Below, in pieces: positions 3,183-47,096 of a DNA stretch of 64,000 nt. Made by a program: the position numbers and the translations under genes. Location: assembly GCF_006345805.1 (NCBI RefSeq), contig NC_043009.1, positions 35,340,001 to 35,404,000 on the forward strand. Direction: 5' to 3'. The notes beneath the pieces were generated by a model. That model had not been told where the DNA came from and did not search any database. It saw only the letters and a program-made list of their open reading frames with translations. This stretch comes from Octopus sinensis. Lineage: Eukaryota. Each line of letters begins with the position of its first letter. The first letter of the stretch is position 1.

Positions 3183-5310
3183 CGCAAAGGCTGAACAAGC
3201 ACCTGGACGAAAACAAACTGTTCCCAGAAGAGCAGAAAGGATGCCGCAAGGGCACATATGGCTGTAAAGATCAACTAATGATTAATAAAGCCGTAACTGA
3301 AGACAGCCACAGAAAGAAGAAAGGCCTCAGTATGGCCTGGATTGACTACAAAAAGGCGTTTGATAGCATCCCCCACACATGGATCCTCGAAACACTAGCC
3401 ATTAACAAAGTAGCACCAACAATCATAAAATTCATAGAGCACTCTATGAATAAATGGCAAACAGTCCTACACCTCCAAACAAAAGAGGGACTCATGAAAA
3501 CCAAAGACATCCCCATTAGAAGAGGAATATTCCAGGGAGACACGCTCTCTCCACTCCTTTTCTGCTTGGCACTGTCACCTCTATCTGATATGCTAAATAG
3601 AACTGGATGCGGATATAAATGTTACGGCAAAACGATCAGCCACCTTTTATATATGGATGACCTAAAACTATACGCTGCAAGTGACAAACAGCTGGAAACA
3701 CTATTAAAGACAGTTCATGGATTTACCAAAGAAATAGATATGAAATTTGGATTAGAAAAATGCGCCAAAGTAACCATGAAAAGAGGAAAACTAGTTAAGA
3801 GTAACAACATCACACTAGATAAAACCAATGAAATAAAAGAATTAGACAAAAGCCAAACTTACAAATACTTAGGAATCCATGAACTAGGTAAGACACAACA
3901 CACACAAATGAAAGAGAAAATAAAAAAAGAATATTATAGACGAGTTAGATCAATACTAAAAACAGAGCTCAATGCTAAAAACAAGATAATAGGTATCAAC
4001 ACTTTAGCTGTCCCAGTTATAAGTTACAGCTACAATATCCTTAACTGGACACGAAATGAACTGTCCAAAATAGATAGGAAAACAAGAAAAATACTGACAG
4101 GATCTAGGATGCATCACCCAAAATCTGACATAGAAAGACTATATATACAACGTATAGAAGGTGGTAGAGGCCTTATGCAGCTGGAAAACTACTATAAAAT
4201 AACCACCATAGGACTGCAAAAATACCTACTTCAGAAGGAAGGAAAACTGATCCAGATAGCGGCAAAACACGAGCAAAACAAAAAACTGTTCTCAGTATTT
4301 AAGGAAGCTGACAAATGCAAACAAGAAATCATACCACCTAATAAACACAAAGAAGAAGAAGAAGAAGATGATGAAGAAACAACAAAAGCTATAAAACAAA
4401 TGAAATCCAAACTAAAAATAGAACAGCAACGAGCCATGATAAAACGATGGCAAGAAAAACCCCTTCATGGTAAATACTGCACTAAACTAAACGCAAAAGA
4501 AATAGACAAAGAAAAATCCCAGCAATGGTTGAGAAGCTCAGGACTCAAAGCAGAAACAGAGGGATTTTTAATTGCAGCACAAGACCAAAGCCTCCCCACC
4601 AGAAATTACCAAAAACATGTAATGAAAAGAAATATTACAAGTAACTGCAGAATATGTGGAGATGGACAAGAAACAATAAATCATATTATCTCTAGCTGCC
4701 CAGTCCTGGCTAAGAAGGAATATATTCACAGACATGACAGAGTTGGAACCTACATACATTGGAAGCTATGCCAACATTATGGAATAACAACAGAAAAAAG
4801 ATGGTATAGGCACACACCAGAAAAGGTCACAGAAAACGAGAAAGCAACCATACTCTGGGATATGCCGATACACACAGATAGAGAAATTAAGGCAACAGAC
4901 CAGATATAGTTGTCAGAGATCATGAAGAAAAAAAATGCTTTCTAATGATGTATCAATACCGTTGATGACAACGTGTCTCTAAAAGAAATGGAGAAACTCT
5001 CAAAATACAAATACCTGGAAATAGATGTAACTAGAATGTGGAATCTGAAAACAGAAACAATTCCTATCATAGTAGGTGCATTAGGCATGATAAAAAAATA
5101 TTCAGACAAATACATAACAAAAACACCACAACTTACAAACACATATAACATACAGAAAATTGCACTACTAGGCACTGCACACATCCTACGCAGAACACTT
5201 TCCATACAATAACCATCAGAGCATCACAACAAATCACAGCATATACCCAAGGCACACAGAGCTGCGCTCGGTAGTGAAGTGAATGCACGCTATAAAATTA
5301 AAACTACTGA
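3181..5310 (+). mobile_element. 5'-truncated R4/Dong-clade non-LTR retrotransposon (RT + CCHC finger + RLE endonuclease, 3' UTR), (AAT)n tail 5310-5370
   Basis: RT motifs IDYKKAFDSIPH, GIFQGDTLSPLLF, YMDDLKLY and YKYLG; CRICGDGQETINHIISSC zinc knuckle; RHDRV; RLE PDIVV...LIDVSIP...EKLSKY; ORF stop at 5212. Confidence 0.95.
3182..5212 (+). pseudogene. Dong ORF remnant: RT/zinc finger open 3182-4909, RLE disrupted by three single-base deletions (~4893, ~4946, ~4960)
   Basis: Frame is open from 3182 (SQRLNKHLDENKLFPEEQKGCRKG..., upstream of the ATG at 3278). Comparison with the duplicate at 5372-5830 locates the three deletions. ORF 4973-5212 is in the same frame as 3278. Confidence 0.85.
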
Positions 5311-7212: not shown

Positions 7213-8021
7213 TATACAATGTAACTTCGAAATTTGAAGAATTTGAACTCAAAGCCCGTAAGGATATAACTGGATGGAAATGAGGCATTAGCCGATAACA
7301 CACTCTATAGCACGTTTAGAACAAGTCATCAGAGAAATTATGATAATTACCAGAATAAACATAGAACATTTTCACAGTAAAAGGATATATTTAAATAGCG
7401 TACCAAAACTTGTTCGTTCTGATACGTATTTTATTGTTCACAGAATTCTCACAAAATAATATCTATTTAGATTTCAAAATTTGAAACGAAAAATTACGGA
7501 GTCAGAGTATTCATAAACATGTACATCCCCTATTAAGTGAGATTTTACTTTTTCTATAAATCATATACTATAATAGATTTAGTAGTTAATGAAATTTTAC
7601 AACAAATGTTAAACATTTCTTACAATACAATATCGTTATTACAAACATTTTGTCTTTCTTACTGTCAAAAACAAACAAAAATAGTGAAGTTGTAGATGTT
7701 ATAATTACCAATAGTTTTGGAAAAAATAAACTTTTGAACATAAAACTGTTTATTTATTCTTGCCTTTGTCTCCCAAAGTGAGGAAAAAAGCAAAAATAAT
7801 ACAATGAATCTAGTAATGATATGAAATAAATTTTATGATAAATGTGTTTACAAGTATGTAGCAAAATGAATACAAATAACAGAAGACCAAGAAATAACGC
7901 AGGGCGAACAAAATTAATATTGAAAATCAATTGTGAAGCACTATATATTAAGCACTACATAAGCATTATATTTAACACAAAAAATTAAATATATATATAT
8001 ATATATATATCAGTGTATATA

Positions 8022-24679: not shown

Positions 24680-27600
24680 AAGCCCAATGCCGATAGTATC
24701 GCGGACGCCGGAGGCAGGTCTGGAAAGCTGGAAGCCTCTAGTCCGTGACCACATATTGGCCACGAATGTTAGAACGTCGCTCTACAATGAATAGCCGTGA
24801 CATTGGAGTTCGGCAGTTGGACTCGTGACTAGGCTGGCCTTTTTAGGATTACCGCAGCCCACCCCTTAATGGGGATCCCCTAGAAAATGTGGAGTGAACA
24901 TCGAACACAGCGACTCGATGTGGCTAGCATACCGCAGCTGGCATACCTCTCACTCATTGGTCGGAATTCATCCATCATTGACTACTAAATCCACACTCTC
25001 CAGCACAAGAGTGACATTTATCGTCCGGAACGACATACAGTCCTCGTCTGCAAGGAACTTGCCCGCTTCAACATCGATGTGGCAGCCTTGAGCGAGACTG
25101 GGCTTCCAGGAGAAGGCAGTATCGGAGAAGCTGGCTCAAATACACCATTTTGGAAAAGGAAGAATTCTAACGAACCACAAATCTATGGAGTTGGCCTTGT
25201 CATCAAATTGAAACTTTTGGATCAACACAGACTTGTCCCAACTGCTGTCAGCGAGCGCCTGATGACACTGAATCGGCAGTGACCATTGTCTGTGGAACAG
25301 CATTCTTGGTCACCACGGCATTGGGAAATGCGATGCTAATGGCCAGCTCTTCCTTTGCACCGAGCCTTTGCACCGAGCACGAACTCGTCATCACTAACTC
25401 CTTCCTTCGTCTCCCAACCAGACAAAAGACGATCTAGAAACACCTACAGTCTAAAAACTGGCACATACTTTTGACTACGTTCTGCCAAGATCCAAAGACA
25501 GACGAAATGTACGAATCACCCACTCCTTGCCTGGTGTTGGTCAGATCCCCTCTTTCTTATTTCTCACCTTCACATCAAAATCCGCCGTCCACCAAAGCGG
25601 GTCTCAGCAAGCATACCTTGCCGGCACATCGACGGCGCCAAACTCCGGAACTCACAGGCATCCCAAGACTTCAGGGAATCCACTGATAGACACCATTGAG
25701 GATCGCTGGACGAGCCTTCATGATGCCATGGCTGCTGCCACTGAGGAATTTCATCTTTCTCGTCAAACCAGTCTTGGTTTGACGGGAATGATGAAATCAT
25801 CTCCCGTCACATCGAAGCCAATCGCCTTTGAGAACTATACTACTGCGGAGAACAAACGAAAACACCAGGTAGCATCAGCGGAATGGCAGCGAGGAATTAG
25901 AGAAGCTCAGAACATTTGGTGGCAGAGAAACTCAGAGGAGGTTCAAAATTATGCGGACGAACGAGACTTGCGTCGCTTTTATGCCGCAACCAAGGAGATC
26001 TTCGGCCCACAACATCATCAGTGAGTGACCTGAAGAACGCAGTTGGCTCCACAATAACCGACACTAAGGAACCCTCGATCGCTGGAAGTCCCATTTTGAG
26101 AGCCTTCTTAATGACCACTCACGCACTTCAGACGAACTCCTCCAAAACACCCCACAGCTTCCCATACGCTATTGGATGTGCCTGCCGCTCTTGTCGCATA
26201 AGTTCAACAAGGCATTTGGGCAGATGAAGTCGGGAAAAGCTCTAGGACCAGACAACATCCCGTTTCAGTTACTCACGCACTGATCACCTGAGCTGAGAAA
26301 TCATCTGACGCTCCTTATCCTCAAGATCTGGGAAAGCAAGACCTTCCCGAATGACTTCCGCGATGCAACTATCATCACCATATACAAGAAGAGAGACCGA
26401 GAGGACTACAGCAACTATCGGGGCATCTTACTCCTGAATATTGTAAACAAGATCATCGCCCGTATCCTAGAGAATCGCCTCCTCATCCTCGCGGAAGACG
26501 TCCTCCCCGAGTCACACTGTTGCTTTCGATCTTTTGTGCCCGCCAACTTCTGGAGAATGTCAAGAACAACATCCTGCAATACTCATCTCCTGGGATCTAA
26601 AGAAAGTCTTTGACAAGGTCCACCGTCCTGTAATGTGGGTCATCCTTGCGCGGTTTGGATGTCCGGAAGAATTCATTGCCCAGGTTCGCTCCCTCTACGA
26701 GGTATGGTGGGTAGGGTATGCCATCAAAAAGCCGTCTCAAACCCGTTACCCGTCACTGGGGGTCTTAAGCAAGGATGTGTCCTGGTACCAACCTTTTTCT
26801 CTTTGTATATGGCCGCCATATTCAACGAAATCCCACTGGATTCACCTTCCATCAACATGCGCTATCGCTTCGATTGCAGATTTTTCAATCTCGCACGTCT
26901 CCGCGCAAAGACGAGGACCTCTATCATCTCAGTCCGTGAGATGCAGTATGCCGGTGACAATGTCACCCATAGTCGGACCATAGATGGCCTACAGACGACG
27001 TTCGATCTTTACAACGCGGCTTATGAACGATTCGGGATGCAGGTAAATATAAGGCCAAGACTGTGATGCAACCTACACCGGGCCAGAACAGTCCACCTAC
27101 GAATACTAGCTTCAACGGCCAACCGCTTGAAGAAGTTTAACACTTTTAATATCTTGGAAGTACTCTTTCGAAGAACCCTGCGTGTGAAAAGGACTTGGAG
27201 AACCGGAGCAGGGCGACCCTCACCGCCTTCGGTAGACTCAACCATTGTGTATTCTTCGAACACGCACTGACCATCCGGACAAAGATCATGGTCTTCCGTG
27301 CTATTGTCCTGTCAACTCGTCTCTACACTTGTGAGACTGGCCCGTTGTACCGCCGTGAATTCAAGCGCTTGAATGCTTCCAGCAATCCAAGCTACGACAT
27401 ATCCTCAATATTCGATGGGAAGATCATATTACCAACAATGAGGTTCCTCGCCGCACCTCACTACCAAGCGTCGATGCCACCATTCTACGCCATCGCGCCC
27501 GCTGGGCAGGTTACGTCCAGCGTATGGTGCCCTCTCGTCTCTTGAGGATCTTGCTCTACGGATAACTTGCAATCGAAACAAGACCCAGCGTAGGCCCGAA

Positions 27601-32756: not shown

Positions 32757-35653
32757 CAGGGATGGGCGAACCTTTTTGATCGCGGGCCGCATAGTGCGTC
32801 TTTGAAACCTTGGCGGGCCTCATTTATAAAAATCAAGGGAAAATATTTTTAAAGGCGGTTATAGACCTATAAACACACAATTGATTGAAAGGAAATTTTG
32901 TGAAATATTCCTGGTTTAAGTGATTTAATTTATTTTTTAGAGTATCGGGTTCATGTTTTTCGGTTATTTGCTCCTATAGTTGAAATTATTACAGGATCCT
33001 CGGTTATTTTGGACAGCCTGTTATTGCTTACAAATTGCCAGGAACTGAATTTTCCTAGTAAAATCTGCACTAATTTTGGACAACCACCTCTTAATATTAT
33101 GGACAACCATGATGAATATTATACTTAAATTCTAGGATACCCAAAATAAAAGATTTTAAAGAGAAATAACAGTTTATTAATATGAATTGATATATGAAAT
33201 TAGAAACGTCACCTGAAGCATTTATTTGAAAAACAAAGCGGCTCTGTAAATAACAATGTCAATGAGAATGATGCAGCTGTCTACTGTCATTTACCAGTTT
33301 GTCAAAATTAGGTGTCAAGTTGCTTGTGCTGATTCTTAATACTGACTGAAGATTTGAGTCTGTGAGAAGTGATCGATTCTTCCCCTTGTTAATTTTCATG
33401 ATGGAGAAAGTCTGCTCACATATGTAAGTTGATGCAAACAACACAAACATCTTTCTTGCAAATATTTTTAGATTTTGAAACTTTTTTGAATGTAGAGAAG
33501 CATAAAACTCGACCAGTGGTTTACTTTCAAACATCATCTTTAAAGAATTGTCGGCTTGCAAATGAATCAGTTCTATCTGCAGTTCCTCGGTAGTTGTTTC
33601 AATGTCACAGGCAAGAGGTGAGTTAAGCAAATCGAACAAGCCTTCAACTGCCTTGAAATCAGCAAATCTTCTAATGAATTCCTTTTGTAAAGCCATCAAC
33701 TGGGAACTGTACTTGTCCGATGATTCTTGTGTAACAGACTGTGTTTTCAGCAGAGGGAAGTGAATAAATTTTTGCTCATTCAGCTGCTTGGCAAAAAGTC
33801 CAAGCTTCCATTGAAAAGCTTTCACTTCCAGGTACAATTCATGAGCAAATATACCTTTGCCTTGCAGTTTTGTGTTAAGTTCATTCAGCTTCTGCATTAT
33901 GTCCACAGCAAATGCAAAATCACAAACCCATTCGTCACTCTCCAGTTCGTTTAAAAAGTCACAGGATATGTCTTGCATTTTGTGAAGCATAAGAATCTCT
34001 GCTTTGAGGTCCCATTCTCTCTTAAGAACTTTTCCAATGCTTAACCAGCGGACATTTGTGTAGTACAGCACATCAGTAAAATCAGCCTCCACATCCTCGA
34101 AGAAACTTCGGAATTGCCTGTGTTTCAATCCCCGTGATCTTATTAAATTCACTGCACGCACCACAGGTTCGATGACATGTTTGAGTTTTAAAGATGACTT
34201 ACAAAGGCTTTCTTGATGTATGATGTAGTGAAAAGACAACACACTGTGTAGTGGAAAATCTTCTTTGATTTTGTCATTCAACAACTTCACAAGGCCGGAA
34301 TGTTTACCGGTGAGTGAAGGAGCTCCATCGGTTGTAATGCCGGCCAGTTTATTTAGGGTTAATCCAGACCTGATTGAAGTGTTAATGACACTGTTGAACA
34401 AATCTTTTCCAGTAGTAGTGTCTTTGAGAGACTCCATAGATAACAATTCCTCTGTAATTTCAAAGTTTTCGTCGATTCCTCTGATGTAAATGAGTAACTG
34501 AGCAGTATCCTAAATATCAGTACTCTCATCTAAAGCAATAGAAAACCACTGAAATCGACCACTGGCTGTTAACAGCTGTTCATGAATATTCACGGCAATT
34601 ACATCAATGCGACGAACAATAGTTCTTCGTGATAGGGAAATGGCTTCTACTTAACTTCAGGACACACAACGCTGACAGCATCAACCATAGAATCATTGAT
34701 AAATTCTGCTTCTGCGAATGACTTGTTTTGCTTTGCAATTTTGTTGGCCAATATAAAACTTGCCTTTGTCGCGTTCCTTTGTAAAGAGGAAGTTTTATCA
34801 AACACATTTTGCTGTTGCTTCAAACGTTTTGTCAGATCATTTGCTTTCTTTTGCAGTTCTTGTTTTGATAAATTGTGTCCAAAATTGGCGTGCTTCGTTT
34901 GAAAGTGGCGTTTCAAATTATATTCCTTGAACACAGCATCTGTTTCAGAACAAATCAAACATGCAGCTTTCACTCCAACGTCGGTAAAGAAATACTTTTC
35001 AGTCCAATTTTCATTAAAAACACATTCCTCTTCAATTTTTCGCTTTTTAGATAGCTTCGAACAACTCATTTTGAGTAAATTTTATCAGACAACAAAAGCT
35101 AGTTTGAAACACTCGTGTCTGTACTAAATTCAAATAATCGATAGAGTGAATGATAACCAACCACAGCTCTGTGTCCAGAAAAAGCTGGTTCAAGCCCTTT
35201 TATTAACCTGGCCGGTTTCTTCATTGGAACGAAACGCATCGTCCATCATGCCCTCTTCACCATCTATCACGTGATTTATTTATTTGAATGTTTCAAGCAT
35301 ATCGATTGACTCGTTGTATTGCCACAATACTTGTTTCATTGTTCTATTAATTTTTGAGTTTGTAGGGTCTGACGAGAAAACACAGAAAAGATATCTTCAC
35401 CCGGAAATGTGTTTTATTATGATGTCATGGGAATATTTCTCGAAATGTTTCATCGCTTCACAGTAGCTGAAACAAACAAACAGCGGACAATTTTGTGAAG
35501 GCGCGAAACAGTGAACTGAAATAAAATGCAAACTATTGTGAATTACCGTGCAACTGAAACAGTTACGAAGTATCTGCATAGAAGTTGGGATTCATAAAAG
35601 CTCTCGGCGGGCCGCATGAAAACCTATGGCGGGCCGTAGTTTGCCCACCCCTG
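32757..35653 (-). mobile_element. Complete hAT DNA transposon (Buster/Charlie group), 2897 bp
   Basis: 15-bp TIRs CAGGG(A/G)TGGGC(G/A)AAC; perfect 8-bp TSD CTTTAGAT at 32749-32756 and 35654-35661 with central TA (Buster-type NNNTANNN). Confidence 0.96.
33259..35069 (-). pseudogene. hAT transposase (~604 aa) with one frameshift (~34650) and one nonsense codon (34510-34512)
   Basis: Zn-BED-like CLICSE...LKRHFQTKH; ALDESTD (D1), TTDGAP (D2), HYIIHQESLC (CxxH with C>Y), NVRWLS, FASTYICEQTFS (E). Frames join as VCPEVK / VEAISLSRRTIVRRI. Confidence 0.92.
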
Positions 35654-45827: not shown

Positions 45828-45993
45828 CAGTGATTCCTAACCTTTTCACTACCACGGACCCCTTTTATTTAAATGAGTTACCCTCACGGACCCGAGGTTA
45901 TTGTAAGGTATGTCAGCTTAACATTTTCACGGATTCCCAGTACTACCTTGGCGGACCACCAGGCATCCGCGGATCACAGGTTGGGAACCACAG
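45828..45993. mobile_element. hAT (Charlie-like) MITE, 166 bp
   Basis: Imperfect TIRs CAGTGATTCCTAACCT / AGGTTGGGAACCACAG; degenerate 8-bp TSD ACGAAGAG / ACGTAGAA. Confidence 0.65.
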
Positions 45994-46165
45994 ACGTAGA
46001 ATAAGGGCTCTGTAACATTGATTACTTGATTGTAGATAAATACACTAATATGAAGCATAATTTCTATTTTAATAAGACAGAGATGAGTTAGCTTTAAGTC
46101 TTTGTTTATATTTCATAGAAGATTACTTCCAAAAGATAGTGTGAGAGTATGCACATGAAGTTTAT

Positions 46166-46281
46166 GCGTCCCCAAAGTCCATCCCCTCCTCTCCGTGGCG
46201 GGGACGCTGGCAACAGGTAGTGTCAGAGCTATGCCGTCGGGAACTTCGGTTCCCGGTAGGGTCACCCAAGGCGGATTGGTC
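46166..46281 (+). ncRNA. Putative HDV-like self-cleaving ribozyme at the element 5' end
   Basis: Helices in nested double-pseudoknot order: P1 46166-73/46200-07; P2 46179-86/46270-79 (bulged); P3 with L3 TCTCCGT 46187-99; GG 46209-10; C(UUCG)G hairpin in P4; CCAA 46266-69. Confidence 0.45.
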
Positions 46282-46860
46282 CGACACTAAGTGGTATTAG
46301 GGCCACAACCCGACAGACGGGGCTCTTGTGGAAATCCTCGGAGTGTCTTTTTCGGCAACCGGCGGCTCATCGGTCCCTGCGTCTGCGGACAATCTGCGGC
46401 AAACAGGATGTCACTACATGCGGGATTGTTGGCGACCGCTTGTGAAATCCATATTCCCACGATTCTTCTTCCCACCGCCAATCTCCGACTTCGCCTGTCT
46501 CTGCGGCCCCTTCCATCTGTCCTTCTGCAACGGCGCTTGCGGTGGTTTGGCCATGCATGTAGGCGTCCGGTGGGTGAACTGAGCCGTGATGTCCTTCTCC
46601 CAACTCCACTTCCAAACTGGCGGAAACACGCGGGCGGGCAACTGAAGACCTGGGCTACGACGATCAAGGAGGACCTCTCAATGCTCACGGGTCCGCAGGT
46701 GGTCAGCCTGCGCCGATGGAACCGTGACTGGCTCGCTATCTCCAGTGAACTGGCGCAGGACCGTCGTGCGTGGGCTGTCATGGTTCGAGATGCCTCGAGG
46801 GTGGTAGAAGAAGCCGACTCAACCCGCCCAGCGTGAATGTCGCCACAAGTACAAGTAAGT
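46166..46860 (+). mobile_element. Bipartite non-autonomous RTE derivative (RTE 5' UTR fused to 3' end of ORF and tail)
   Basis: TSD AAGTTTAT at 46158-65 and 46861-68. The 5' part has RTE/Bov-A-type motifs (CGTGGCG..GAGCTATGCCG..AGGGTCACCCAAG). The 3' part encodes RRLRWFGH...AQDRRAW, stop at 46836, tail CAAGTACAAGTAAGT. Confidence 0.85.
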
Positions 46861-47052
46861 AAGTTTATGATTAATATCGAGTGGCTGTAAAGATAGTCTC
46901 CTCCACTAAAACTCTACAGTATTTCACTATTTCTAATCTATTTCATGTCAGAGATTATACGGAAGGTGCAGCTCTTTTTTTTCTCTTCTGGAAAAAAACT
47001 GGATTTTAGCCGATATGAATCTTAGGGGAAGGTGGGAAGAAGAGAGATACAC

Positions 47053-47096
<44 letters not shown>

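What the first reader, a model, noticed from the sequence alone, without database searches (positions are those of the whole stretch)
46158..46868. Mini-retroelement whose TSD-defined 5' end is exactly the first base of an HDV-like ribozyme fold
Seen: an 8-bp TSD (AAGTTTAT, 46158-65 / 46861-68; the next G also matches, so the boundary is +/-1) brackets a 695-bp GC-rich insert. Its first base G46166 opens a perfect 8-bp helix GCGTCCCC/GGGGACGC. Downstream helices fall in HDV order: P2 CCATCCCC (46179-86) / GGCGGATTGG (46270-79); P3-L3 (T)CC-TCTCCGT-GG(C); GG for P1.1; a P4 domain with CGGGAAC-TTCG-GTTCCCG; and a CCAA J4/2 candidate. The 3' half is only the last ~110 codons of an RTE ORF plus tail. 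Established: RTE-clade LINEs carry HDV-like ribozymes in their 5' UTRs, and bipartite 5'+3' RTE derivatives (Bov-A type) exist. Inference: this is a young, full-length, ribozyme-processed non-autonomous retroposon that needs no internal Pol III promoter and may be undescribed in this lineage. Deviations from the canonical fold: P1 is 8 bp rather than 7, P3 has a T-C mismatch, P2 is bulged, and an alternative stem TAGTGTC (46218-24) / GACACTA (46283-89) could compete as a folding switch.
Basis: partly seen in the sequence, partly recalled or inferred. Interest (0 to 1): 0.78.

Follow-up and report, generated by a model that had tools for sequence, protein, structure and literature searches.

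The report
Ribozyme-headed, internally deleted RTE retroposon copy
A 695-base jumping-gene remnant sits between duplicated target sites and begins exactly where a hepatitis-delta-like self-cutting RNA motif would cut; this layout is already known from other such elements, and only this one copy could be found.

Summary
A 695-bp GC-rich insert (46166-46860) lies between two copies of AAGTTTAT(G).

The 5' half of an HDV-like ribozyme (P1, P3, L3, P1.1, J1/4) is well supported. A covariance model built from 16 phage and gut HDV-like ribozymes, without the window sequence, gives one hit in the 64 kb: 46166-46214, E about 7e-5, starting at the TSD boundary. Rfam RF02682 aligns from the same base but scores below threshold (18.4 against 44 bits).

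The 3' half (P4, J4/2, P2) is not better than chance (p about 0.17). A second candidate exists, and a more stable hairpin competes with the proposed fold.

The last 121 codons and a 24-nt repeat-ended 3' UTR come from an RTE-type element. Their divergence from relatives (15/16/60 % by codon position) indicates a recently coding parent.

No second copy, parent element or related ribozyme was found, so "non-autonomous family" is untested. A one-off deletion, including one after insertion, explains the copy equally well. The architecture matches the SIDEs described for R2 and CR1. I rate it a new member of a known kind, of moderate to low interest.

The parts
46158..46165 (+). 5' target-site duplication AAGTTTAT (G46166 also matches, so the boundary is +/-1)
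   Evidence: D10
46166..46860 (+). The inserted element, 695 bp, GC about 0.6 in an AT-rich flank
46166..46214 (+). HDV-like ribozyme 5' half. P1 46166-72(73) / 46200(01)-07; J1/2 46174-78; P2 5' strand 46179-86; P3 46188-89 / 46197-98 (46187 x 46199 mismatch; alternative outer pair C46185 or C46186 with G46200); L3 UCUCCGU 46190-96; P1.1 G46209-G46210; CAAC 46211-14
   Evidence: Rfam RF02682 alignment starts at 46166. Independent CM R1: the only hit in the window, 26.9 bits, E 6.7e-5, model positions 1-46. Pattern statistics. The same L3 and J1/4 occur in 17 phage and gut HDV-like ribozymes.
46215..46265 (+). P4 domain of model A: weak basal helix GGU 46216-18 / ACC 46064-66-equivalent at 46264-66, plus a perfect 7-bp hairpin with a UUCG loop at 46238-55
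   Evidence: The basal helix is not predicted by energy minimisation.
46266..46279 (+). Model A: J4/2 CCAA (candidate catalytic C46266 or C46267) followed by the P2 3' strand GGCGGAUUGG 46270-79
   Evidence: Duplex -7.9 to -8.7 kcal/mol; chance p about 0.17. CCAAG resembles the C(U/G)AAG of the phage and gut ribozymes.
46218..46289 (+). Competing long hairpin (UAGUGUC/GACACUA closing stem, CCGUC/GGCGG inside) that sequesters the model-A P2 3' strand
   Evidence: I3
46314..46332 (+). Model B alternative: J4/2 CAGA(C) with C46314, and P2 3' strand GGGG 46319-22 ... GUGGA 46328-32 with a 5-nt bulge
   Evidence: -10.2 kcal/mol. Compatible with the MFE hairpin but needs a non-canonical 24-nt J4/2.
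46290..46467 (+). Linker of unknown origin (presumed 5' UTR or leader of the parent). ATG at 46408 is in frame with the RTE tail, giving a 142-codon ORF. A 15-nt imperfect tandem duplication lies at 46447-60 / 46462-75. Weak nucleotide similarity to relatives begins at about 46428.
   Evidence: no protein homologue in any frame; D4
46468..46836 (+). C-terminal 121 codons plus TGA stop of an RTE-type ORF
   Evidence: tblastn 59 % identity. HMM positions 232-363 of 396, 203 bits. 109 homologues. Codon-position divergence 15/16/60 %.
46837..46860 (+). 24-nt 3' UTR ending in short repeats (ACAAGT ACAAGT AAGT AAG), no poly(A)
   Evidence: The same short tail is present in all aligned relatives.
46861..46868 (+). 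3' target-site duplication AAGTTTAT

Best explanation
The insert is one retroposed copy of an RTE-type non-LTR retrotransposon that has lost its entire endonuclease and reverse-transcriptase coding region.

What remains is the element's true 5' end and its 3' end. The 5' end is about 260-300 nt that begin with an HDV-like self-cleaving ribozyme. The 3' end is the last 121 codons plus a 24-nt repeat-ended 3' UTR. This is the architecture called a SIDE (short internally deleted element).

Proposed mechanism: the element has no promoter of its own and is transcribed by read-through from upstream. The ribozyme folds and cuts just 5' of G46166, which sets the RNA 5' end. An RTE endonuclease/reverse transcriptase supplied by an autonomous copy recognises the 3' end and nicks an AT-rich target. 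It then copies the RNA to its very 5' end by target-primed reverse transcription, leaving the 8-9-bp duplication.

Shown: the boundaries and TSD, the RTE origin and recent coding history of the 3' part, the ribozyme 5' core, and its coincidence with the 5' boundary.

Inferred: self-cleavage itself, the 3' half of the fold, the origin of the linker in the parent's leader, mobilisation in trans, and the timing of the deletion. My split for timing is about 0.35 for a propagating mini-element, 0.25 for a one-off event during retrotransposition, and 0.25 for a deletion after insertion.
For: - TSD and composition step.
- Two covariance models align an HDV-like core with model position 1 at 46166. 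Rfam RF02682 scores 18.4 bits and was the only family with E<10 in 46000-47000. Model R1, built from 16 phage and gut ribozymes without the window, gives a single hit in 128 kb searched: 26.9 bits, E 6.7e-5.
- The core pattern occurs once in the window and in 0 of 100 shuffles.
- L3 UCUCCGU and GGCAAC are identical to those of bona fide F. prausnitzii-type ribozymes, which also show the U or A spacer after P1.
- RTE tail: 109 homologues; profile alignment of 203 bits that begins sharply at 46468; a short repeat-ended 3' UTR shared with 8 aligned relatives.
- Divergence from relatives is concentrated at third codon positions, 15/16/60 %. The tail was therefore under coding selection until recently, and an autonomous partner exists or existed.
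- No tRNA, 5S, 7SL or other RNA head.
- Literature: cleavage at the element's 5' junction is reported for RTE ribozymes (PMC3774820). R2 SIDEs consist of a 5' ribozyme plus a 3' end (PMC3414825).
Against: - Rfam scores are far below the gathering threshold, and nothing in the window passes gathering.
- The J4/2 plus P2 assignment is matched or beaten in 17 % of shuffles. A rival site exists.
- The drawn fold is about 9-10 kcal/mol less stable than a competing hairpin, and its P4 has no predicted closing helix. P3 has only two clean pairs.
- No covariation could be tested, because no homologue of the 5' 290 nt was found in proteins, metagenomes, genomes or viral contigs.
- All 10 RTE relatives fetched are 5'-truncated, and none carries a ribozyme.
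- Model R1's training sequences were fished with a pattern partly derived from the window, so its invariant columns favour the window.
- There is only one copy in 64 kb.
Confidence: 0.62

Rival explanations
1. A full-length, ribozyme-headed RTE copy inserted here, and about 2.6 kb of its interior was later lost by an ordinary genomic deletion. The 695-bp unit was never an RNA and never moved.
For: The TSDs would be identical in this case. The element is a single copy in the window, and no other copy was found anywhere. A 15-nt tandem duplication and a 12-nt gap lie at the junction, as expected near a repair scar (D4).
Against: The junction lies where several independent relatives also begin (L001, L002, L003, and the repeats in L007). 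That points to an RNA- or RT-level event rather than a random DNA break. Full-length RTE insertions appear to be rare: 0 of the 10 relatives sampled.
Confidence: 0.22
2. This is a one-off, dead-on-arrival chimera. During reverse transcription of an RTE RNA, the enzyme jumped from about 435 nt upstream of the 3' end to the 5' leader of the same or another RTE RNA. The result is a single bipartite insertion that does not propagate.
For: Template jumps by non-LTR reverse transcriptases are documented, including U12 and tRNA sequences at R2 5' ends (PMC3414825). 5' ends and tandem repeats cluster at the same ORF position in relatives. The element is a single copy.
Against: Nothing rules it out. 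It predicts no other copies with the same junction, and that cannot be checked without the genome.
Confidence: 0.22
3. The ribozyme resemblance is a relic or a coincidence, and the 5' end is set by something else, such as an internal promoter start site as in L1Tc Pr77, or the end of an unrelated RNA captured by a template jump. No self-cleavage occurs.
For: Rfam score is sub-threshold. The 3' half of the fold is not better than chance. A more stable competing fold exists. P3 has a mismatch. L1Tc shows that one 5' segment can be both promoter and ribozyme (PMC3383444).
Against: The 5' core is highly non-random and starts at the TSD boundary to the base. No known RNA family other than HDV-like matches the head. 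Active R2 ribozymes tolerate comparable deviations (PMC3774820).
Confidence: 0.13

Closest known systems
R2 SIDEs (short internally deleted elements) of Drosophila (Eickbush & Eickbush 2012, PMC3414825)
   Same: The architecture is the same: a 5' HDV-like ribozyme joined to the 3' end of the parent non-LTR element, with the ORF lost. Mobilisation would be by the parent's machinery, and the 5' end is set by self-cleavage of a co-transcript.
   Different: R2 elements insert site-specifically in 28S rDNA and use a restriction-like endonuclease. This element is in AT-rich unique DNA with an 8-9-bp TSD, has an RTE-type tail and keeps 121 codons. R2 SIDEs were shown to have many copies with variable 5' junctions. 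Here only one copy is known.
[quoted passage not shown] 2011, as cited in PMC3774820 and PMC6765202)
   Same: A ribozyme lies at the extreme 5' end of a promoter-less non-LTR element, and its cleavage site coincides with the element's 5' junction.
   Different: Those are autonomous elements. I could not read the primary paper or compare sequences, and none of the Rfam drz-Agam or CPEB3 models matched.
Faecalibacterium prausnitzii-type HDV-like ribozyme (Rfam RF02682) and its phage and gut-metagenome relatives
   Same: L3 (UCUNCGU), the P3 CC/GG pairs, P1.1 and J1/4 (GGCAAC) are identical. P1 is a 7-bp helix starting with G, followed by a one-base spacer. J4/2 is C-N-A-A-G.
   Different: The bacterial and phage forms have a short regular P4 and a clean 3-bp P3 and 7-8-bp P2. 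Here P4 is a 50-nt irregular domain, P3 has a mismatch and P2 is bulged. The score is 18.4 bits against a threshold of 44. The host and genetic context are unrelated, so the similarity is of the functional core and says nothing of descent.
NARTc / L1Tc of Trypanosoma cruzi (PMC3185411, PMC3383444)
   Same: A non-autonomous truncated derivative shares the 5' HDV-like ribozyme of its autonomous partner.
   Different: The L1Tc head is also an internal promoter (Pr77). The clade is different (ingi/L1Tc) and the host is a protist.
Perere-3/SR3 (RTE clade) with 5' twister-variant ribozymes in Schistosoma (PMC8501958), and the CR1 SIDE Persaeus (PMC6740152)
   Same: An RTE-clade element uses a 5' self-cleaving ribozyme next to the TSD. 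SIDEs also exist outside R2.
   Different: The ribozyme class differs (twister against HDV-like). No ribozyme is reported for Persaeus.

Membership tests
HDV-like self-cleaving ribozyme | P1 helix of about 7 bp whose first nucleotide is the cleavage site | tested here: met
   8-bp perfect helix 46166-73 / 46200-07 (I9). Both CMs place model position 1 at 46166.
HDV-like self-cleaving ribozyme | P3 (3 bp) closing a 7-nt L3 with conserved U...C.CG, and P1.1 formed with GG of J1/4 | tested here: met
   CC-UCUCCGU-GG and U-GG-CAAC are identical to 17 phage and gut ribozymes. The third P3 pair is a U-C mismatch, or C46185/86-G46200 with a bulge.
HDV-like self-cleaving ribozyme | Catalytic C in J4/2 (C-N-R-A) directly followed by the 3' strand of P2, closing the double pseudoknot | tested here: inconclusive
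   CCAA 46266-69 plus an 8-bp bulged P2 exists, but 17 % of shuffles do as well. There is a second site at C46314 and a competing hairpin.
HDV-like self-cleaving ribozyme | Score at or above the curated Rfam threshold for an HDV-like family | tested here: not met
   0 hits at gathering in the whole window. RF02682 scores 18.4 against 44 bits, E 0.98.
HDV-like self-cleaving ribozyme | Compensatory changes in P1, P2, P3 and P4 among homologues | not testable with these tools
   No homologue of the 5' module was found.
HDV-like self-cleaving ribozyme | Mg2+-dependent self-cleavage abolished by mutating the catalytic C | not testable with these tools
   This needs a bench assay.
RTE-clade non-LTR retrotransposon (origin of the 3' part) | ORF C-terminus homologous to elements that carry a non-LTR reverse transcriptase | tested here: met
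   Relatives L004, L008 and L320 carry RVT_1 directly upstream of the same tail.
RTE-clade non-LTR retrotransposon (origin of the 3' part) | Very short 3' UTR ending in short tandem repeats, with no poly(A) (from my own knowledge of the clade) | tested here: met
   24 nt after the stop, ACAAGT/AAGT repeats, and the same in all aligned relatives.
RTE-clade non-LTR retrotransposon (origin of the 3' part) | Placement inside the RTE clade by RT or APE phylogeny | not tested
   Only indirect evidence: named hits include an 'Endonuclease-reverse transcriptase' and flatworm proteins at 33-50 % identity. The C-terminal LRWFGH motif is not clade-specific.
SIDE / non-autonomous LINE derivative | 5' end and 3' end of the parent LINE joined, with the coding interior missing | tested here: inconclusive
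   The 3' end is from an RTE-type element, and RT/EN is absent (HMM positions 1-231 unmatched). Derivation of the 5' 300 nt from the same parent could not be checked.
SIDE / non-autonomous LINE derivative | Several dispersed copies sharing the internal junction but with different TSDs | tested here: inconclusive
   One copy in the window and none in the public collections reachable here. The source genome itself was not searchable.
Classical SINE | Head derived from tRNA, 5S or 7SL RNA with an internal Pol III promoter | tested here: not met
   No tRNA. No Rfam family other than HDV-like in 46000-47000, even at E<10.

The most novel reading that the evidence does not exclude
The 695-bp unit is a member of a propagating family of RTE-derived SIDEs. 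Such a family would be a promoter-less, non-autonomous retroposon that relies on read-through transcription plus an HDV-like ribozyme to define its 5' end. Its ribozyme would have an unusually elaborate P4 domain that can switch into a competing hairpin.
Probability: 0.3. Interest if true: 0.5.

Novelty: new member of a known kind. Interest (0 to 1): 0.34.

Why it matters
If cleavage and copy number were confirmed, this would extend the rare SIDE class from the site-specific R2 elements to a dispersed RTE-type element. SIDEs have so far been reported for R2 and R2/R1 in fruit flies, for a few cases in Anopheles and Trypanosoma, and for CR1 in Lepidoptera (PMC6740152). It would also give a compact natural substrate for studying how RTE enzymes recognise a 3' end of about 430 nt.

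It does not open a new principle. Ribozyme-defined 5' ends of RTEs and ribozyme-plus-tail mini-elements are both already described.

Tried and rejected
1. Rfam at gathering threshold on the whole window gave nothing.
2. Other copies in the window: blastn and tblastn found none.
3. A six-frame translation of 46166-46455 against 5.8 billion proteins gave no hit at E<=10. The 5' module is therefore not conserved coding sequence, and no called ORF overlaps a relative of it.
4. An exact 27-mer of the ribozyme core in JGI metagenomes gave 0 hits.
5. Degenerate core patterns in viral, metagenome and GTDB genome contigs gave 0, 117 and 76 loci, and more than 117 for the looser pattern in viral contigs. 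After filtering for P1 complementarity, the real ribozymes among them were bacterial or phage F. prausnitzii-type. None lay near an RTE reverse transcriptase.
6. Ten RTE relatives were fetched through protein hits (ENA ERZ21867824, NCBI GCA_052426985.1, Logan SRR8281668). All were 5'-truncated and showed no HDV-like hit. The parent's 5' end could not be recovered.
7. The idea that the ribozyme region is a diverged duplicate of the C-terminal WRRDW...SSELAQ coding segment came from weak tblastn and HMM hits. I rejected it because the nucleotide alignment scores below every shuffle.
8. A short-P4 reading (GUAGU/GCUAU hairpin, then GCCGU as J4/2) was rejected. It has no A-A after the C, and its P2 partner is locked in the UUCG hairpin.
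9. Identifying the source organism from accession numbers in the literature found nothing. Ruminski 2011 and Webb 2009 are not in the held library.

Full report
**1. What is in the sequence**

The stretch 46166-46860 is a 695-bp block with GC of 0.50-0.62, set in DNA with GC of 0.30-0.40. It is bracketed by AAGTTTAT at 46158-65 and 46861-68, and the next base (G) matches as well (D10). The element ends in ACAAGT-ACAAGT-AAGT-AAG with no poly(A). Because the AAG of the TSD could also belong to this tail, the 3' boundary is uncertain by up to 3 nt and the 5' boundary by 1 nt.

The element occurs once in the 64-kb window.

The window is repeat-rich eukaryotic DNA. It also holds an L1-like reverse transcriptase ORF, a hAT transposase remnant and another non-LTR reverse transcriptase fragment. 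It contains no tRNA near the element and no RNA gene that passes Rfam thresholds.

**2. The 3' module**

The frame ending at TGA 46834-36 encodes an RTE-type C-terminus, LQRRLRWFGH...AQDRRAW. A search of 5.8 billion proteins returned 109 homologues, all 213 aa or shorter, with a best identity of 68-72 %.

Ten encoding loci were fetched, from ENA ERZ21867824, NCBI GCA_052426985.1 and Logan SRR8281668. They are ordinary 5'-truncated copies, about 70 % identical at the nucleotide level to element positions 306-695. Several continue upstream into an RVT_1 domain.

A profile of 88 relatives aligns to the window from 46468 only. It covers HMM positions 232-363 of 396 and scores 203 bits, and nothing matches the reverse transcriptase part. 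tblastn gives the same start. Weak nucleotide similarity may reach back to about 46428.

All aligned relatives share the very short 3' UTR that ends in short repeats. To my knowledge this is typical of RTE elements. I did not test clade placement by phylogeny.

Against the consensus of the ENA copies, the window differs at 15 %, 16 % and 60 % of first, second and third codon positions. The tail therefore evolved under coding constraint for nearly all of its separate history. The loss of the interior is recent, and an autonomous relative exists or existed recently in this genome.

**3. The 5' module: the ribozyme core**

In 46000-47000, Rfam at E<10 reports one family, RF02682 (the F. prausnitzii HDV ribozyme). 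The score is 18.4 bits against a threshold of 44, with E 0.98. The alignment is full length and starts at 46166.

The pattern CCTCTNCGTGG-N8-12-GGCAAC covers P3, L3, P3', P1' and J1/4. It occurs once in the window and in none of 100 shuffles.

Scanning public collections with this pattern recovered 17 clear HDV-like ribozymes in phage and gut contigs. They have the form GCUGCUC...CC-UCUNCGU-GG-U-GAGCAGC-A/U-GGCAAC, then a short P4, then GGC(U/G)AAG, then the P2 3' strand.

A covariance model of the 5' half, built from 16 of these without the window sequence, finds a single hit in both strands of the window. The hit is 46166-46214, 26.9 bits, E 6.7e-5, covering model positions 1-46.

One caveat applies. 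The training sequences were fished with a pattern partly taken from the window, so the invariant columns favour it. The P1 pairing and the spacing are independent of that.

Two models that know nothing about the TSD thus place ribozyme position 1 on the first base after the TSD. This coincidence is the strongest evidence that the RNA template of this copy began at a ribozyme cleavage site.

**4. The 5' module: the 3' half of the fold**

The sequence CCAAG resembles the C(U/G)AAG of the phage and gut ribozymes. P2 is CCAUCCCC/GGCGGAUUGG, which forms 8 bp with two bulges and abuts both P3 and J4/2.

In dinucleotide shuffles of the downstream 126 nt, 515 of 3000 contain an equally good C-N-R-A site with an abutting P2. 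A second candidate, model B, uses C46314-AGA(C) with GGGG...GUGGA at 46319-32 and gives -10.2 kcal/mol.

The minimum-energy nested fold keeps P1 but folds 46218-46289 into one long hairpin (UAGUGUC/GACACUA with CCGUC/GGCGG inside). That hairpin buries the model-A P2 strand. It reaches -51.5 kcal/mol with z = -2.1, against about -42 kcal/mol for model A including P2.

Model A's P4 has no predicted closing helix. Only GGU/ACC can be drawn, although the domain contains a perfect 7-bp hairpin with a UUCG loop.

None of this is disqualifying. Active R2 ribozymes have P4 regions that range from absent to elaborate, mismatched P2 stems and, in one species, a P3 mismatch (PMC3774820, section 16). Still, the 3' half is unproven, and this particular copy may or may not cleave.

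**5. The linker**

The segment 46290-46467 has no protein homologue in any of the six frames and no Rfam match. It is probably untranslated leader sequence.

An ATG at 46408 is in frame with the tail and gives a 142-codon ORF. Frame 2 is open from 46291, but at this GC content that is not significant (my estimate is p about 0.15).

A 15-nt imperfect tandem duplication lies at the junction (D4). Independent relatives L001 and L002 begin at about this ORF position, L003 begins about 20 nt further in, and L007 has three tandem 27-nt repeats there. This suggests a preferred point of RT stalling or template switching. I could not resolve it further.

**6. Interpretation**

The robust reading is a TSD-flanked RTE-type copy that keeps the element's genuine, ribozyme-defined 5' end and its 3' end but lacks EN and RT. 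How the interior was lost cannot be decided from one copy. There are three possibilities:

- a single deletion or template jump during retrotransposition;
- a later genomic deletion inside a full-length insertion, which leaves the same TSDs.

I put these at roughly 0.35, 0.25 and 0.25. The remaining 0.15 goes to readings in which the ribozyme is not the cause of the 5' end.

**7. Comparison with what is known**

[quoted passage not shown] The primary paper was not available to me.

R2 SIDEs are exactly "5' ribozyme plus 3' end" (PMC3414825). NARTc shares the L1Tc ribozyme head (PMC3383444). RTE-clade Perere-3 uses a twister variant in the same position (PMC8501958). SIDEs are called rare (PMC6740152).

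This find is therefore a new member of a known kind at most. The claim that it is an undescribed family is not established.

**8. Verdict**

- The ribozyme 5' core and its coincidence with the insertion boundary are well supported.
- The complete fold, the catalytic activity and the family status remain open.
- Interest is 0.34.

Nothing in this work called for a referred step.

Noticed in passing
Alignment A1: L001:~2990, L002:~3095, L003:~3085, L007:5580-5680; window ~46428-46475: In several independent RTE relatives the 5' truncation points cluster within about 25 nt of one ORF position, roughly 435-450 nt from the 3' end. L007 carries three tandem 27-nt repeats there. The window element's internal junction, with a 15-nt tandem duplication, falls at the same place. 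This may be a hot spot for RT stalling or template switching.
   Followed up: partly
window 3278-4909 (+): A 543-aa ORF with RVT_1 and zf-RVT domains. It is an L1-like non-LTR reverse transcriptase, unrelated to the RTE tail.
   Followed up: partly
window 27168-27556 (+), with ORFs 26534-27545: Fragment of another non-LTR reverse transcriptase C-terminus (LYTCE...RARWAGYVQRM), with an in-frame stop. It belongs to a different family from the element studied.
   Followed up: no
window 33259-34446 (-): A 395-aa ORF with a weak hAT C-terminal dimerisation domain, probably a DNA transposon remnant.
   Followed up: no
window 45830-45995: A GC-richer repeat-like block just upstream of the insertion. 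It contains repeated CACGGACCC motifs and the palindromic ACCAGGCATCCGCGGATCACAGGT...GGTTGGGAACCAC. It is single-copy in the window and looks like a SINE or MITE fragment.
   Followed up: partly
window 47041-47092: A (GA)n microsatellite about 180 bp downstream of the element.
   Followed up: no
L007:7200-7244 and 7815-7859 (-): Two weak type I hammerhead matches (19.9 and 21.3 bits against a threshold of 34) lie 615 nt apart in an ENA contig that also carries an RTE relative. This could be a retrozyme-like tandem.
   Followed up: no
L008:9104-9218 (+): A 5S rRNA-like match just below the Rfam threshold (36.6 against 38 bits). It may be a 5S gene or a 5S-derived SINE.
   Followed up: no
L035 (10050-10075 and 13174-13199, - strand) and L049 (5391-5416 and 8515-8540, - strand), among other IMG/VR and gut-metagenome loci: F. 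prausnitzii-type HDV-like ribozymes are common in phage contigs. Some contigs carry two copies about 3.1 kb apart, with L3 position 4 and P1 varying in a compensatory way.
   Followed up: partly
window 46157-46237, frame 0: Translating the ribozyme region gives SSPWRGRWQQVVSELC. This weakly resembles the RTE C-terminal RWRRDWMKVSSELAQ segment (tblastn E 1.4). The nucleotide comparison scores below all shuffles, so I judge it chance.
   Followed up: yes
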